DNA of 64,000 bases from Diadema antillarum (Eukaryota): positions 620,001 through 684,000 of the forward strand of contig NW_027271046.1 in assembly GCF_040938485.1 (NCBI RefSeq), written 5' to 3'. Within the stretch, counting starts at the first letter, position 1; each line of letters opens with the position of its first letter. Below are positions 37,799-42,753 of this stretch, in pieces. The position numbers and the translations under genes were made by a program. The notes beneath the pieces are model-generated. The model searched no databases. It was given only the letters and a program-made list of their open reading frames with translations, and was not told where the DNA came from.

Positions 37799-37927
37799 AA
37801 TAGGAAGATTAAATGAGAACTTACCTGTTTGAAATTTAATCTTGATTTTATAAGTAAGTCGTAGAGAAGAGACTACATGTCTCATCGGGTGTAATATGAG
37901 ATCCCGCTGGTCACGTGTGTGGCAATT
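37799..37927 (-). repeat. DIRS 3' ITR with 3' extension
   Basis: 37869-37927 is the exact complement of 42671-42729 (59 bp); 37799-37878 is the exact complement of 38032-38111 (80 bp). Confidence 0.97.
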
Positions 37928-38031
37928 TTTTAAAGCTGTACGAGACTACAGGATATATTGATAGGAAGATGAAGATGTTGAGAACTTTACCTGCATAAGG
38001 CTACGTAAGTCGCAGGGTGGGAAGAGGAGGG

Positions 38032-38166
38032 ATGTAGTCTCTTCTCTACGACTTACTTATAAAATCAAGATTAAATTTCAAACAGGTAAGTTCTCATTTA
38101 ATCTTCCTATTTTATTACGTAAGTCTCCGATCGAGACTACATGTCTCATCGGGTGTAATATGAGAT
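38032..38166 (-). repeat. DIRS internal complementary region (ICR, copy of the circle junction)
   Basis: Joins the complements of the element's 3' end (80 bp) and 5' end (58 bp, 42696-42753), both exact. Confidence 0.97.
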
Positions 38167-38290
38167 TTCAAAGCCCTGTAGTCACGTACAGAACAATACA
38201 TCTGTAAGCCATCAATGGCATCACTACAGACAGACATACCTGTGCACTCTGTGCAGACTGCCATTCCATATGCAGACTGAAGTTGCCAAG

Positions 38291-39271
38291 TCACATTTTC
38301 AGTAAAGCCTGGGCAAATTGGTTAGTATCTTGTAAGGGCTTGCAATAAAACTTGCGGAATGTCTTCTCAGCCACCCATCCAGCCCTTGAGAGGATTTCTG
38401 ACACAGGCACCTCACTCCTTTGTGCTGCTGACGTAGAGGCCGCCCTTGTGGAGTGAGCACTGAAGATCTGTGTATCGACACCAGCGTCATGTAGGACAGT
38501 CTTAATCCAACGTGCAATTGTTTGCTTTGATGCACGACGGTGAGGCTTCTTATAAGCTACTAACAAATGTCTCTCCATCCCTCTTAGATTCTGTGTCCGC
38601 TGCACATACTCTTTCATATAATTCACTATGCACAATCTCCTATCTGGAGGGTACGCATTTAGTGTGACACTGAATCCCGTATTTCCAGGCTTGTTTTGTT
38701 TCAGTGTGTTCTCAAAAGAAATCTCAACAGATGATTTTTTCCACCTCATCCTGTCCAGGTGGATAACATGAAGAGACTGCACCCTTTGTGCAGAAACAAG
38801 TGCTATCAGCATAGTCAATTTCTGAGTAAGTTGCTTCAGATTAAGTGCCTTGGATGGAGACAGCTTTCTGAGGTAGTCCAAGACGACTTTAACATCCCAG
38901 ATAGAAGAGTAGCGAGGAGCAGGCGGCTTTAAATGAAAAACTCCTTTCATAAACCTATTTACAAGTGGGTGCGACCCAAGAGGCTGTCGTCCACCATCAA
39001 CTATGAGAAACGTGGAAAGGGCACTCCTGGCTGTATTCAGGCTACTGTATCCAACTTTTTCTTTGTCTAACATATTTGTAAGAAATGCAAGGACATCACA
39101 AACTTGGACATTCAAATAATTAATGTGTCTCTCTGCACAAAATCTTTTCCATTTTCTGATGTACACCTGGTACTGTGCTTTAGTGGATCCTTTCCACGAC
39201 GCAGCTATGATGTCTATTGTCCTTTGTGTGAGGCCCTGCTCTGCGTAAAGTCCCTTCCAAGCCTGCAACAT
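38291..39271 (-). CDS. DIRS ORF3 tyrosine recombinase (326 aa)
   Basis: SAQR, HSTR, GW, KFY catalytic signature; N-terminal SAM-like integrase domain motif (YSSLNTARSALS). Confidence 0.95.
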   Translation of the reverse strand: MLQAWKGLYAEQGLTQRTIDIIAASWKGSTKAQYQVYIRKWKRFCAERHINYLNVQVCDVLAFLTNMLDKEKVGYSSLNTARSALSTFLIVDGGRQPLGSHPLVNRFMKGVFHLKPPAPRYSSIWDVKVVLDYLRKLSPSKALNLKQLTQKLTMLIALVSAQRVQSLHVIHLDRMRWKKSSVEISFENTLKQNKPGNTGFSVTLNAYPPDRRLCIVNYMKEYVQRTQNLRGMERHLLVAYKKPHRRASKQTIARWIKTVLHDAGVDTQIFSAHSTRAASTSAAQRSEVPVSEILSRAGWVAEKTFRKFYCKPLQDTNQFAQALLKM

Positions 39272-41334
39272 AATAGAGACAAGTGATTATTCAAAGGATG
39301 TGGGGTGCCTGAAACTGGTTGACATAATAATGTCTTACTCTTTCGAATTAACATGGGTTCCTCAACCAGCATACTCTTAAGGATAGGGTACCAAACCTGT
39401 GTTGGCCAATTGGGCACCACTAAAATCCCACATGCCTCATCCTTCTGAATTTTCTGCAAGCACATTGGCACTAGATTGAATGGGGGAAAGGCATAAAACT
39501 CCCACTGACTCCAATCAACTGTGAAGGCATCTACTGCCCAGGCCTCTGGTTCAGGCCTCCAAGAAATATATCGGTCTACCTGTTTATTTAGGCGGGAGGC
39601 AAACATGTCAATTTCAGGCACACCAAATCTCCTGATTATTCGTTGAAATATGCTCTTATTCAACATCCATTCTGTGCTGTCCGAGAATTTTCGAGACATG
39701 CGATCTGCTTCAATATTCAATCGCCCAGGTAGGTGAGCAGCTGTAAGCCAGATGTCCTTACTAATACACCATTCCCAAATATCAATGGCCATTTGATTAC
39801 ATTCAGGAGATTTTGTGCCACCCATATTGTTCAGATATGCGACAGCCGTTATGTTATCTGCTCTAACAAGTACATGATTGCTCCTTTTCTCTGAGCAAAA
39901 GGCTTTTAGCCCATGACTAACTGCTACCATTTCTAGCAGGTTAATTTTATTCTGATTTGCCTCTTTCAACTCATCACTATTCCATCTGCCACCTGTTGAA
40001 GTGCACAGATTTGTTGCCCCCCAGCCTTTACCACTGGCATCTGTGTGGATTTCCACATCTGGTTTTGCCCTCTGCATTGGGCTAAACTGTGACTCAAGGT
40101 TCCATATCCACCACTGAATTTCATGGATGCTTTCTCTTGACAAGGTCATATGCCTATCGAAATGTCCCTTGTTCCTTGCAAGGGCAAGAATCTTGTCTTT
40201 CTCTAAGGCTCTATAATAGAGAGGGCCATATTGTACTGCTGGGAATGATGCCACTAGTTGTCCAATAACCTTTGCAACTGTTCTGATAACAGGTTTCTCA
40301 GTAGCCAACAGTTCTTTACAAGACTGCTTTATGTTCTCCTGTTTTTCTTTTGGAAGCCTAACACTCATATCCAGAGTGTTCAGATTGAAACCCAGAAAGG
40401 TAATCTCATGAGTAGGCTCTAAAACTGATTTTTCAGGGTGAACAATAAACCCCAAATTTGATAGCAACTTAGTAGTTGCGCTCACTGCTGCCTGCATTTC
40501 CTCGGCAGTTTTTGCAATGATAAGTGTATCATCTAGATATGCAATTACAATGTGGCCCTGCTCCCTGAGCGTTGCCAAAACAGGCTTTAGCAGTTTTGTA
40601 AAGAGCCTTGGTGCTGAACTAAGCCCATTGGGAAGTGCTTGAAATTGCCATAACCTTCCCTGCCACGTAAATCTCAGGAATTTTCGAGAATCTGGGTGGA
40701 TAGGAACCGTGAAGTATGCGTCTCGGAGATCGACTGAAGCTAAATAATCTCCCGGAGAAATAAGCGGTAGAGCTGTCTTGATATTATCCATCTTAAAATG
40801 CTGATACAAAATACTCTTGTTTAATTCTGTCAAATCCAAGATGACCCTGAGGCCACCATTCTTCTTTGGCCTTGTGAAAATATTTGATATGAATTCCCCT
40901 TCTACATGTTCACATGCTTCTATGACATTTTTCTCAACCAGCTTGTTGATTTCTTCCTGAATCGAGGCCATTTCCTCAGAATTTCTTTTGAATTCATGAA
41001 GGGGTTTTTCCCTACAAGGGGGATATTTAGCTGGGTCAAATTCAAGCTTGTAGCCCTGTACAGCTTGCAAAATATATGTATCAGATGTAAGCTCTCCCCA
41101 GTTGTGCATATGTAGCTTCAGTCGACCTCCGACTGCAATATCATTGACATTAGATGTTATTGTCTCCCTTACCTCATCACTGTTTGGGAGTTGCTCTATT
41201 TCATCCTGCCCTGCCCTTGGCCGAGCTTCCGGTACTGTGGGGCTTGGCGTCCCTCTCGAGACGCTGTCGGGGTAAACGTATGGGGAGCTTGTGGGGTCCT
41301 CTTCCTCCACTGGTTTCGTTGGCCTAAAAAAGGC
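39214..41334 (-). CDS. DIRS ORF2: reverse transcriptase, RNase H, Dam-like methyltransferase domain
   Basis: VGGRL, DLRDAY, LPNGLSSAP, YLDD; TDAS..LLEM..ADN..EAD; DMFAS..YAFPP. Frame open from 41334; first ATG only at 41109. Confidence 0.96.
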   Translation of the reverse strand, partial: AFFRPTKPVEEEDPTSSPYVYPDSVSRGTPSPTVPEARPRAGQDEIEQLPNSDEVRETITSNVNDIAVGGRLKLHMHNWGELTSDTYILQAVQGYKLEFDPAKYPPCREKPLHEFKRNSEEMASIQEEINKLVEKNVIEACEHVEGEFISNIFTRPKKNGGLRVILDLTELNKSILYQHFKMDNIKTALPLISPGDYLASVDLRDAYFTVPIHPDSRKFLRFTWQGRLWQFQALPNGLSSAPRLFTKLLKPVLATLREQGHIVIAYLDDTLIIAKTAEEMQAAVSATTKLLSNLGFIVHPEKSVLEPTHEITFLGFNLNTLDMSVRLPKEKQENIKQSCKELLATEKPVIRTVAKVIGQLVASFPAVQYGPLYYRALEKDKILALARNKGHFDRHMTLSRESIHEIQWWIWNLESQFSPMQRAKPDVEIHTDASGKGWGATNLCTSTGGRWNSDELKEANQNKINLLEMVAVSHGLKAFCSEKRSNHVLVRADNITAVAYLNNMGGTKSPECNQMAIDIWEWCISKDIWLTAAHLPGRLNIEADRMSRKFSDSTEWMLNKSIFQRIIRRFGVPEIDMFASRLNKQVDRYISWRPEPEAWAVDAFTVDWSQWEFYAFPPFNLVPMCLQKIQKDEACGILVVPNWPTQVWYPILKSMLVEEPMLIRKSKTLLCQPVSGTPHPLNNHLSLLCCRLGRDFTQSRASHKGQ

Positions 41335-42575
41335 CTAGATGTGCTCCCTGACGAATCCGCGTAGGATGTCCGCGACACCCAACCAGCTTCCTTGTATCTG
41401 CGTTGAGACCCTTGGCTTGGGTAGGGGTGATAGGCCGGCTTGGGTCTTTTAAACCCGCCTCTCATCACTCCGGCCGCCGCTTTGTGCTGGTCTTGCAAGT
41501 CCTTTACTTGCTTGCCCAAGTCATCCCCAAAGAGATACTTGGTTACAGGGTTTGTTGGTTTGCAGAGATGAGTAAATTTCGCGTTCAGATCCGGCTTGAT
41601 CAATTCTTTACGAAGAGCATTCATCTCAAAGTTTGCGTTGCACAACAAAGCTAGAACGTCTTGCTGTTCGGGAGATATGTTGCTTGGATCGAGCAGGCTG
41701 ACGTAAGCCGAGATACCTCTTGTTAGGGATTTTTGGACCCTCTGAAGTTTCACATCCTTCGTACGAACAGGGGCAGAGAGGTTGTCCCAGATCGTCTGAT
41801 TCACTTTCGGGGTGTCGATCCCTCGACAGTTCGACGGCACTGGGTATTTGCTACTTGTCTCATCGAGCACTTTCTCTTCCAGATGATGGCTCATCAAGTA
41901 GTTGACAGAGCTTGCTAGCTCCTCATCAAGAGGCTGTCCAATATCTGATGCCACCGCAAATTTAGCAGCAAAAGCTGGTACTGTCTGTGCTTCTGCCCTA
42001 TCCACGCACGACTCCAGCTCTGAGCTATGCCCTGCACTCAAGGCATGCACCATGTCATCATCCTCAACATCCATTTCTTCTGTATGTGCCAAGTCATAAT
42101 CTGCACTAACGCTAGAAGTTGAAGCAGAGGCTGAATCACTTCCACTGCGATCAAGATGTCGGTCTGGCTGTGCATGTCCCATGCCTGCCACCCCTTCCCT
42201 TTTACTGGGAAGAGCCTCCATGAACTGACAGAGCAAGCCTTCGAGTCTATCAAGACGACTGTTTACGGTCCCAAAGTTATCATTTGTCAACTTTGACGAG
42301 TTGGATTTCGTAGCAATCCGAGGCCGAGTCGCCGCTACCGCCGCGCGGTCGCCAGCCTCCATCACCGCCGGTACTCCCCGTCCACGGCCCGTGTTGGCAG
42401 CCGTACCTTTCGCTGCCGCTGCGCGGTCAGCTTGGCTAGCACTCACCGCCTGTTGTGACTCCATTGCTGCTCTGTTTTCGCCCGAAGATTCTGCCGCTGC
42501 GCGGTCAGTTTTCTTCTCTTTGTTTTCTTTTTCCGCGGCCACGCCAGCGGATCTTCTATCCTTCTGTTCTTTCAT
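41196..42575 (-). CDS. DIRS ORF1 gag-like protein (459 aa from first ATG)
   Basis: Long open frame 5' of RT; PSNC..PKVN..IW and YLFGDDL motifs typical of DIRS ORF1. Confidence 0.88.
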   Translation of the reverse strand: MKEQKDRRSAGVAAEKENKEKKTDRAAAESSGENRAAMESQQAVSASQADRAAAAKGTAANTGRGRGVPAVMEAGDRAAVAATRPRIATKSNSSKLTNDNFGTVNSRLDRLEGLLCQFMEALPSKREGVAGMGHAQPDRHLDRSGSDSASASTSSVSADYDLAHTEEMDVEDDDMVHALSAGHSSELESCVDRAEAQTVPAFAAKFAVASDIGQPLDEELASSVNYLMSHHLEEKVLDETSSKYPVPSNCRGIDTPKVNQTIWDNLSAPVRTKDVKLQRVQKSLTRGISAYVSLLDPSNISPEQQDVLALLCNANFEMNALRKELIKPDLNAKFTHLCKPTNPVTKYLFGDDLGKQVKDLQDQHKAAAGVMRGGFKRPKPAYHPYPSQGSQRRYKEAGWVSRTSYADSSGSTSRPFLGQRNQWRKRTPQAPHTFTPTASREGRQAPQYRKLGQGQGRMK

Positions 42576-42670
42576 TATTCTGATAAGTCCGAAAGGAAGA
42601 ATTTCCGCGAAATTCTTGAATATTCGAGGGTTGTGAAAAATCCTTTTCACACACACAAAACGCGCCAACG

Positions 42671-42753
42671 AATTGCCACACACGTGACCAGCGGGATCTC
42701 ATATTACACCCGATGAGACATGTAGTCTCGATCGGAGACTTACGTAATAAAAT
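42671..42753 (-). repeat. DIRS 5' ITR
   Basis: Complementary to both the 3' ITR and the ICR. Confidence 0.97.

What the first reader, a model, noticed from the sequence alone, without database searches (positions are those of the whole stretch)
41247..41340. Predicted programmed -1 ribosomal frameshift joining DIRS Gag to RT (U_UUU_UUA)
Seen: ORF1 reads CCT TTT TTA (41333-41325), an X_XXY_YYZ heptamer in the correct frame and the same heptamer HIV-1 uses. ORF2 is in the -1 frame, and that frame opens only one codon earlier (TAG at 41337-41335, then GCC TTT TTT AGG). ORF2's first ATG (41109) lies downstream of the conserved VGGRL motif, so ordinary initiation would truncate it. The heptamer sits in a GGCCT-TTTTT-AGGCC mini-hairpin, and a 7-bp GAGA-tetraloop hairpin lies 60 nt downstream (41264-41247). 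Inference: a ~1120-aa Gag-RT-RNaseH-MT fusion is made by frameshifting. I am not aware that this mechanism has been demonstrated for DIRS elements.
Basis: partly seen in the sequence, partly recalled or inferred. Interest (0 to 1): 0.85.

Follow-up and report, generated by a model that had tools for sequence, protein, structure and literature searches.

The report
DIRS retrotransposon gag-pol -1 frameshift site
A jumping gene of the DIRS type almost certainly makes its reverse transcriptase as a Gag-Pol fusion by letting the ribosome slip back one base at a U_UUU_UUA site. It is the same trick retroviruses use, and it turns out to be conserved across 45 divergent relatives.

Summary
On the minus strand gag reads CCT TTT TTA (heptamer 41331-41325). 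Pol lies in the -1 frame, which opens one codon earlier, after TAG 41337-41335. The first pol-frame ATG (41109) lies after the conserved GGRLK motif.

In this window alone the heptamer is only modestly unlikely by chance (about 0.03-0.15). Comparison settles the matter. Among 85 fetched relatives (pol 37-65% identical), the -1 gag/pol overlap is the rule.
- All 45 independent lineages carry an in-phase X_XXY_YYZ heptamer inside the overlap. In 39 it is UUUUUUA, AAAAAAC or UUUAAAC, against 0-2 of 45 in equal-length control stretches.
- The heptamer type was exchanged several times on the pol tree.
- T6/A6 runs are phase-locked.
- 28 of 42 lineages have no pol-frame AUG before the conserved motif.
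- Four lineages are natural single-ORF gag-pol fusions.
- RNA structure is enriched just 3' of the heptamer family-wide (p 2e-6).

This copy itself has no convincing stimulator.

Verdict: a canonical retrovirus-type -1 frameshift, a new member of a known kind. I found no description of it for DIRS elements in the searchable literature. First-stage notes flagged the same signal on other DIRS copies of this genome.

The parts
41325..41331 (-). Slippery heptamer T_TTT_TTA (U_UUU_UUA) in the gag zero frame
   Evidence: conserved in phase in relatives
41335..41337 (-). TAG that closes the pol (-1) frame just upstream of the heptamer
41196..42575 (-). gag ORF, 459 aa from its first in-frame ATG (42575) to the stop at 41198-41196. 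It has no Pfam family but is homologous to the gag of relatives.
39214..41334 (-). pol ORF (RT, RNase H, methyltransferase-like) in the -1 frame. It is open from 41334 and has no ATG before 41109.
41196..41334 (-). gag/pol overlap of 139 nt
41116..41130 (-). GGRLK, the first conserved pol motif, encoded upstream of the first pol ATG
41107..41109 (-). First ATG of the pol frame. Its context is poor (C at -3, C at +4) and 26 ATGs lie between the gag start and it.
41274..41316 (-). Weak irregular stem-loop 8 nt after the heptamer (AAAC..GUGG.GGA / UCCCCAU..GUUU). It is not distinguishable from shuffled sequence and is only a candidate stimulator.
41247..41264 (-). 7-bp hairpin with a GAGA tetraloop. 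It is locally stable but lies 60 nt from the heptamer.
41321..41335 (-). GGCCU-UUUUU-AGGCC mini-hairpin that encloses the heptamer. It is not conserved in relatives.
38291..39271 (-). Tyrosine recombinase ORF of the same element
37799..38166 (.). Right terminal repeat (37799-37927) and internal complementary region (38024-38166) of the DIRS element
   Evidence: I1, I3, I4, D4
42671..42753 (.). Left terminal repeat. It is 100% complementary to 37869-37927 and to 38109-38166.

Best explanation
The element at about 37799-42753 (minus strand) is an intact DIRS1-like tyrosine-recombinase retrotransposon.

Proposed mechanism. Its full-length RNA is translated from the gag AUG (42575).
- Most ribosomes terminate at 41198-41196 and give a 459-aa Gag.
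- A minority slip back one nucleotide at U_UUU_UUA (41331-41325). The P- and A-site tRNAs re-pair from UUU-UUA to UUU-UUU.
- Those ribosomes continue in the pol frame (next codon AGG at 41325) and give a 1120-aa Gag-RT-RNaseH-MT fusion.

This is the retroviral gag-pol -1 programmed frameshift. It sets a low Pol:Gag ratio and ties Pol to Gag.

What is shown: the sequence anatomy, and conservation of the signal across the family.

What is inferred: that slippage happens, its efficiency, and the stimulator. In this copy the stimulator is at best a weak irregular stem 8 nt downstream, so this copy may rely mostly on the very slippery U6A.
For: 1. Heptamer phase, -1 frame and open frame are as described.
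2. Pol is in the -1 frame behind a long gag ORF in nearly all relatives with an intact upstream gag ORF, overlapping by 46-319 nt.
3. All 45 junction lineages (clustered at 75% nt identity) have an in-phase X_XXY_YYZ in the overlap. The density is 27.7 per 1000 positions against 3.5 in the rest of gag. Classical UUUUUUA/AAAAAAC/UUUAAAC occur in 39/45, against 0-2/45 in equal-length flanks. The log10 probability of all 45 by chance is about -38.
4. The flanking sequence and the gag residues are not conserved (FL, KN, LN, GF), so the constraint acts on the nucleotide pattern.
5. The heptamer type changed at least 7-11 times on the pol tree. AAAAAAC arose at least 3 times inside UUUUUUA clades, that is, replacement rather than loss.
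6. T6/A6 runs are phase-locked in overlaps (35 of 40) but spread over all phases in the rest of gag.
7. The 45-nt window starting 3 nt after the heptamer has mean z -1.47 against -0.08 for controls, Wilcoxon p 1.8e-6. Many lineages have GC-rich hairpins at a spacer of 5-8 nt with unrelated sequences.
8. 28 of 42 lineages have no AUG in the pol frame before the conserved motif.
9. Four lineages encode gag and pol as one 1150-1299 aa ORF, so a Gag-Pol fusion is a viable product.
10. A 99.2% identical copy in another sample (L089) and a 61%-identical relative (L001) keep CCT TTT TTA GG at the same place.
Against: - There are no expression data of any kind: no reporter, Ribo-seq, peptide or transcript map.
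- In this copy the 60-125 nt after the heptamer fold no better than shuffles (z +0.67 and +0.75; z -0.74). No Rfam frameshift element matches.
- The lineages share ancestry, so the chance calculation overstates independence.
- Hosts of most relatives are unknown, because they come from metagenome contigs.
- Loci with a disrupted or truncated gag were left out of the 45. Several of these still carry a phased U6A.
Confidence: 0.85

Rival explanations
1. The heptamer is incidental. Pol is translated on its own, from AUG 41109 or a non-AUG codon, by leaky scanning, by reinitiation after the gag stop 87 nt upstream, or by internal entry.
For: An ATG exists at 41109, only 7 codons after GGRLK, so little conserved sequence would be lost. 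This copy lacks a convincing stimulator.
Against: - 26 ATGs lie between the gag AUG and 41109, and its context is poor.
- 28 of 42 lineages have no pol-frame AUG before the conserved motif, and in many the first one is more than 90 codons inside pol.
- This rival does not explain 45/45 phased heptamers, their turnover, or the adjacent structures.
Confidence: 0.06
2. Pol is made from a spliced or subgenomic RNA that removes or bypasses gag. The overlap is only a by-product of compact coding.
For: Other first-stage notes on this genome propose splicing for the recombinase (s1-229904). An acceptor-like ttgcag precedes the YR ATG. No transcript data are available to exclude splicing.
Against: - Splicing needs no phased slippery heptamer and no hairpin 5-8 nt after it, yet both are conserved.
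- The -1 relation of pol to gag is itself conserved, which a separate mRNA would not require.
Confidence: 0.05
3. The shift is made by the RNA polymerase or reverse transcriptase. It slips on the T6 run and produces a fraction of transcripts with one extra or one missing base.
For: The window's site and 33 of the 45 lineages contain a run of six identical bases, U6 or A6.
Against: - The runs are locked to one codon phase (35 of 40), which polymerase slippage does not need.
- 11 lineages use UUUAAAC, GGGUUUU, GGGAAAC or CCCUUUU, which have no 6-base run.
- Runs of six are short for efficient transcriptional slippage (established knowledge; not tested here).
Confidence: 0.03

Closest known systems
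HIV-1 gag-pol -1 programmed ribosomal frameshift (U_UUU_UUA plus downstream stem-loop; Jacks et al. 1988, from my own knowledge)
   Same: - Identical heptamer, also followed by GG (UUUUUUAGG).
- It is encoded as Phe-Leu-Gly in gag, and pol is entered in the -1 frame.
- The purpose is a minority Gag-Pol fusion.
   Different: - No homologue of the HIV stem-loop is present: there is no Rfam hit and no significant fold in this copy.
- Pol here has no protease or DDE integrase, but carries a methyltransferase-like domain and is followed by a tyrosine recombinase ORF.
- The element is a DIRS retrotransposon, not a retrovirus.
-1 frameshift sites of animal Ty3/gypsy and BEL retrotransposons (Gao et al. 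2003, RNA 9:1422; cited from memory, paper not held)
   Same: Pol is in the -1 frame relative to gag, with conserved slippery heptamers in the overlap. DIRS RT/RNase H is regarded as related to Ty3/gypsy (PMC3266345).
   Different: A different order of retroelements: inverted terminal repeats, an internal complementary region and a tyrosine recombinase. As far as I recall that survey covered LTR elements only.
DIRS1-like retrotransposons as described by Piednoel et al. 2011 (PMC3266345)
   Same: - gag, RT/RH/MT and YR ORFs.
- Inverted terminal repeats, and an internal complementary region matching both termini.
   Different: That overview, and the other DIRS papers I could read, discuss pol/YR overlaps. 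They do not mention a gag-pol frameshift or a slippery site.

Membership tests
Programmed -1 ribosomal frameshift site (retroviral gag-pol type) | X_XXY_YYZ heptamer in the zero-frame phase | tested here: met
   CCT TTT TTA at 41333-41325 in the gag frame
Programmed -1 ribosomal frameshift site (retroviral gag-pol type) | Downstream ORF in the -1 frame, open from the heptamer onward, and lacking its own usable start | tested here: met
   The pol frame is open from 41334. The first ATG is at 41109, after GGRLK. 28 of 42 relatives have no AUG before the motif.
Programmed -1 ribosomal frameshift site (retroviral gag-pol type) | Stimulatory stem-loop or pseudoknot 5-9 nt downstream | tested here: inconclusive
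   This copy has only a weak irregular stem at an 8-nt spacer, with z +0.67 to -0.74. Family-wide, structure is enriched right after the heptamer (p 1.8e-6) and hairpins at a 5-8 nt spacer occur in many lineages. RNAalifold on 8 sequences gave no consensus.
Programmed -1 ribosomal frameshift site (retroviral gag-pol type) | Signal conserved in relatives beyond what coding explains | tested here: met
   45/45 lineages carry a phased heptamer, 39/45 a classical one. Types are exchanged on the tree and the encoded residues differ.
Programmed -1 ribosomal frameshift site (retroviral gag-pol type) | Trans-frame product or measured frameshift efficiency | not testable with these tools
   Needs a reporter assay, Ribo-seq or mass spectrometry.
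DIRS1-like tyrosine-recombinase retrotransposon | gag-like ORF, an RT/RNase H/methyltransferase ORF, and a tyrosine recombinase ORF | tested here: met
   The pol ORF hits RVT_1 at 1.4e-23. It also has sub-threshold hits to RT_RNaseH, PCIF1_WW and Dam. The third ORF hits Phage_integrase at 2.7e-9.
DIRS1-like tyrosine-recombinase retrotransposon | Inverted terminal repeats plus an internal complementary region matching both termini | tested here: met
   I3: 37869-37927 with 42671-42729, 100%. I4: 38109-38166 with 42696-42753, 100%. I1: 37799-37886 with 38024-38111, 97%.
HIV-1 frameshift element (Rfam HIV_FE) | Match to the family's sequence/structure model | tested here: not met
   cmscan of 40900-41600 at E up to 10 gave no hit to any Rfam family. 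Only the heptamer plus GG is shared.

The most novel reading that the evidence does not exclude
Retrovirus-type -1 ribosomal frameshifting would be the ancestral and near-universal way that animal-type DIRS1-like retrotransposons (gag-pol-YR order) make Gag-Pol. The slip site has been kept through repeated exchange of slippery heptamers (U6A, A6C, UUUAAAC, GGGUUUU, GGGAAAC) and of lineage-specific hairpins. This has not been described for the DIRS order. The family would then offer dozens of natural, highly divergent frameshift cassettes, and it would answer how DIRS pol is expressed.
Probability: 0.45. Interest if true: 0.6.

Novelty: new member of a known kind. Interest (0 to 1): 0.5.

Why it matters
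How DIRS elements express their reverse transcriptase is not addressed in the experimental and survey papers I could read. Those papers discuss only overlapping ORFs.

A conserved gag-pol -1 frameshift would have four consequences.
- DIRS elements would fall squarely under the retroviral/Ty3 expression logic: a Gag:Gag-Pol ratio set by recoding, with Pol delivered as a Gag fusion.
- It would support descent of DIRS elements from a gag-pol ancestor.
- It would tell annotators to model these elements as Gag plus a 1100-1300 aa Gag-Pol, rather than a pol ORF with an arbitrary ATG.
- It would give recoding researchers a set of natural heptamer/hairpin variants to test.

It is not surprising in kind, because -1 frameshifting is the textbook solution for retroelements.

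Tried and rejected
- Rfam scan of the junction: no hits at all.
- RNAalifold on eight UUUAAAC/GGGAAAC-clade junctions: no consensus helix, because the loops differ in length and the 3' arms do not align. I relied instead on per-sequence folds and shuffle z-scores.
- The mini-hairpin enclosing the heptamer: not conserved, and a ribosome sitting on the site would melt it.
- 'The frame opens only one codon earlier' as a signal: rejected. In relatives it opens 0-198 nt before the heptamer.
- ENA contigs of the closest relatives (79% and 59% identity): no DNA was returned.
- IMG/VR scan: only one locus.
- Literature: nine full-text searches and seven papers read found no statement on DIRS gag-pol frameshifting. 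Goodwin & Poulter 2001 and Gao et al. 2003 are not held, so prior mention cannot be excluded.
- Rows left out of the 45-lineage statistics:
  - 12 loci with a disrupted gag (L011, L012, L031, L035, L036, L044, L050, L060, L061, L066, L073, L077);
  - 8 loci truncated at the contig end;
  - 4 in-frame fusions;
  - L074, where pol is +1.
  - L045 and L055 lack a heptamer but cluster with L039 and L022, which have one.
A gag profile HMM was used only as a search device.
Full report
**1. What is in the window**

On the minus strand there are three long ORFs.
- A 459-aa gag-like ORF from its first ATG at 42575 to the stop at 41198-41196. It has no Pfam match.
- A 706-codon open frame, 41334-39214. 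It matches RVT_1 (1.4e-23) and has sub-threshold RNase H and methyltransferase-like hits.
- A 326-aa tyrosine recombinase, 39271-38291 (Phage_integrase 2.7e-9).

The repeats fit a DIRS element.
- The left terminus 42671-42753 is 100% complementary to 37869-37927.
- The left terminus is also 100% complementary to the internal block 38109-38166.
- The right terminus 37799-37886 is 97% complementary to 38024-38111.

This gives inverted terminal repeats plus an internal complementary region that matches both ends, which is the DIRS1-like layout described in PMC3266345. A 99.2% identical copy sits on a TARA metagenome scaffold (L089). The family is therefore young.

**2. The observation**

Reading the minus strand, gag runs ...TCT AGG CCT TTT TTA GGC CAA..., so T_TTT_TTA (41331-41325) is in the X_XXY_YYZ phase.

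The pol frame is one base upstream (-1). It has TAG at 41337-41335 and then GCC TTT TTT AGG CCA ACG.... The overlap is 139 nt.

The first pol-frame ATG is at 41109. That is seven codons after GGRLK (41130-41116), the first block conserved among 22 aligned pol proteins.

A slip gives 417 Gag residues plus 703 pol-frame residues, 1120 aa in total.

**3. Is it more than chance?**

For this copy alone, only mildly. Using the rate of in-phase heptamers in the rest of gag across the family (3.5 per 1000 positions), a 46-codon overlap holds one about 15% of the time. It holds a classical one a few percent of the time. The case rests on relatives.

**4. Relatives**

A protein search with pol returned 845 proteins at E <= 1e-20 among the 8000 candidates scored. 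I obtained DNA for the following:
- four Logan contigs (L001-L004, pol 61-65% identical);
- 80 metagenome loci (L005-L084, 37-54%);
- one IMG/VR locus (L085);
- L086-L089.

In nearly all loci with an intact upstream ORF, pol is in the -1 frame relative to a 270-520 codon gag ORF (the shorter values are ORFs cut by a contig end), overlapping by 46-319 nt. I clustered the junction regions at 75% nucleotide identity, which gave 45 lineages.

Heptamers:
- All 45 lineages have an in-phase X_XXY_YYZ heptamer inside the overlap. The two wrong phases have one in 12/45 and 5/45.
- The density is 27.7 per 1000 positions against 3.5 in the rest of gag.
- The chosen heptamers are UUUUUUA (22), AAAAAAC (10), UUUAAAC (7), GGGUUUU (2), and GGGAAAC, CCCUUUU, UUUUUUG and UUUUUUU (1 each).
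- The three classical ones occur in 39/45 overlaps, but in 0, 2 and 1 of 45 equal-length stretches upstream and downstream.
- Treating lineages as independent, log10 P that all 45 have a heptamer is about -38. Shared ancestry makes this an overstatement, but the next points do not depend on independence.

**5. The constraint is on the nucleotide pattern, not on a peptide**

The sequence around the heptamer is unalignable between lineages. The gag residues encoded are FL, KN, LN, GF, PF or GN.

On a pol tree the heptamer type changes at least 7-11 times. Well-supported branches force at least three separate origins of AAAAAAC inside UUUUUUA clades (for example L007 beside L008, and L039 with L032/L041). 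A deep clade uses UUUAAAC/GGGAAAC. Replacement of one slippery heptamer by another, never simple loss, is the classical signature of a functional slip site.

Even copies with a broken gag keep a phased U6A (L011, L012, L031, L044, L050).

**6. Ribosome or polymerase?**

Runs of exactly six T or A in the overlaps start at codon position 3 in 35 of 40 cases. In the rest of gag, A6 runs are spread over all three phases (18/17/10) and T6 runs are nearly absent. Eleven lineages use heptamers without a six-base run. Phase-locking fits tRNA re-pairing, not transcriptional slippage.

**7. Stimulator**

Across the 45 lineages, 45-nt windows starting 0-5 nt after the heptamer fold better than dinucleotide shuffles (mean z about -1.3). 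Windows elsewhere sit near -0.1.

A repeat run gave -1.47 against -0.08, Wilcoxon p 1.8e-6. 16/45 lineages reached z < -2, against 14/315 control windows.

Individual folds show GC-rich hairpins at a spacer of 5-8 nt with unrelated sequences (L017, L024, L028, L039, L047, L049, L065, L071, L078, L079, L081). RNAalifold gave no consensus on eight sequences, because loop lengths differ.

This window's copy is an exception.
- The 60 and 125 nt after the heptamer give z +0.67 and +0.75.
- The best candidate is an irregular stem at an 8-nt spacer (41316-41274).
- The near-identical copy L089 has U where the window has C at 41295. That completes a 6-bp GUGGAG/CUCCAC stem at a 14-nt spacer, still z about 0.
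- The GAGA hairpin (41264-41247) is locally stable (z -2.4 for its window). It lies 60 nt away, beyond the reach of a ribosome paused on the heptamer.
- No Rfam family matches.

The stimulator in this copy is therefore unresolved. U6A is the most slippery heptamer known (established knowledge) and may suffice for a low Gag-Pol yield.

**8. Alternatives for pol expression**

Independent initiation is unlikely.
- 26 ATGs precede 41109 after the gag start, and its context is poor.
- 28 of 42 lineages have no AUG in the pol frame between its opening and the conserved motif. Often the first AUG is 90-126 codons inside pol.

Four lineages (L037, L054, L064, L068) encode gag and pol as a single 1150-1299 aa ORF, with gag-profile hits of E 1e-35 to 1e-57. 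A Gag-Pol fusion is therefore a product the family tolerates.

A spliced pol mRNA cannot be excluded without RNA data. It would not explain the phased heptamers or the adjacent hairpins.

**9. Comparison with what is known**

The mechanism is the retroviral and Ty3/gypsy-type gag-pol -1 frameshift. The heptamer plus GG is the one HIV-1 uses (own knowledge). The HIV stem-loop is not present, so this is not a member of that RNA family.

The element meets the defining features of DIRS1-like retrotransposons.

In the searchable open literature I found no mention of a slippery site or gag-pol frameshifting in DIRS, Ngaro or other tyrosine-recombinase retrotransposons (searches). The DIRS overview, the fungal survey, the VIPER/TATE study and two Dictyostelium DIRS-1 papers speak only of overlapping ORFs. 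The original subscription descriptions (Goodwin & Poulter 2001; Poulter & Goodwin 2005) and Gao et al. 2003 could not be read. An earlier remark may exist there.

First-stage notes of this scan flag the same U_UUU_UUA signal on other DIRS copies of the same genome. Those notes are untested and are not independent evidence.

**10. Verdict**

Confidence that -1 ribosomal frameshifting at this heptamer is how the family makes Gag-Pol is about 0.85.

It is a new member of a well-known kind. The added value is that the signal is family-wide and turns over between classical heptamers.

Interest is moderate (0.5): not surprising in mechanism, but apparently an undocumented answer to how DIRS pol is expressed, and directly testable.

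Noticed in passing
window 39214-39271 (minus strand): The recombinase ORF is again in the -1 frame relative to pol and overlaps it by 58 nt. The overlap holds no slippery heptamer. The YR ATG (39271) overlaps an acceptor-like ttgcag (CAG at 39266-39264), which follows a pyrimidine-rich stretch. YR is therefore probably not made by frameshifting. Another first-stage note proposes splicing.
   Followed up: partly
L037:326-3775, L054:1035-4778, L064:935-4831, L068:818-4492: Four related lineages encode gag and pol as one continuous ORF of 1150-1299 aa. L068 still has RPFLGK and TTTTTTA in phase, so the fusion there may be a recent indel or an assembly error.
   Followed up: partly
L074:1-1188: This is the one relative with pol in the +1 frame behind a 395-codon upstream ORF. 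It could be an indel in a dead copy, a sequencing error or a different recoding event.
   Followed up: no
L089 (TARA_SAMEA6040077 metagenome scaffold) versus window 39020-42750: A copy 99.2% identical over 3737 nt (25 mismatches) lies in an ocean-expedition metagenome. The family is young, and the host or a close relative was sampled there. Window 41295 is C where L089 has U, which completes a 6-bp stem.
   Followed up: partly
junctions of the 45 lineages: The bases just after the heptamer are biased. UUUUUUA is mostly followed by GG (as in HIV-1), AAAAAAC in 7 of 10 lineages by UU, and UUUAAAC always by U. The bias could reflect an effect of the 3' context on slippage, or the first pol-frame residue (R or L).
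   Followed up: no
window 41196-42575 (minus strand): The gag protein has no Pfam family and no zinc knuckle. It is nevertheless clearly homologous across lineages whose pol is only 40-60% identical: a profile built from them hits the fused ORFs at E 1e-35 to 1e-57.
   Followed up: partly
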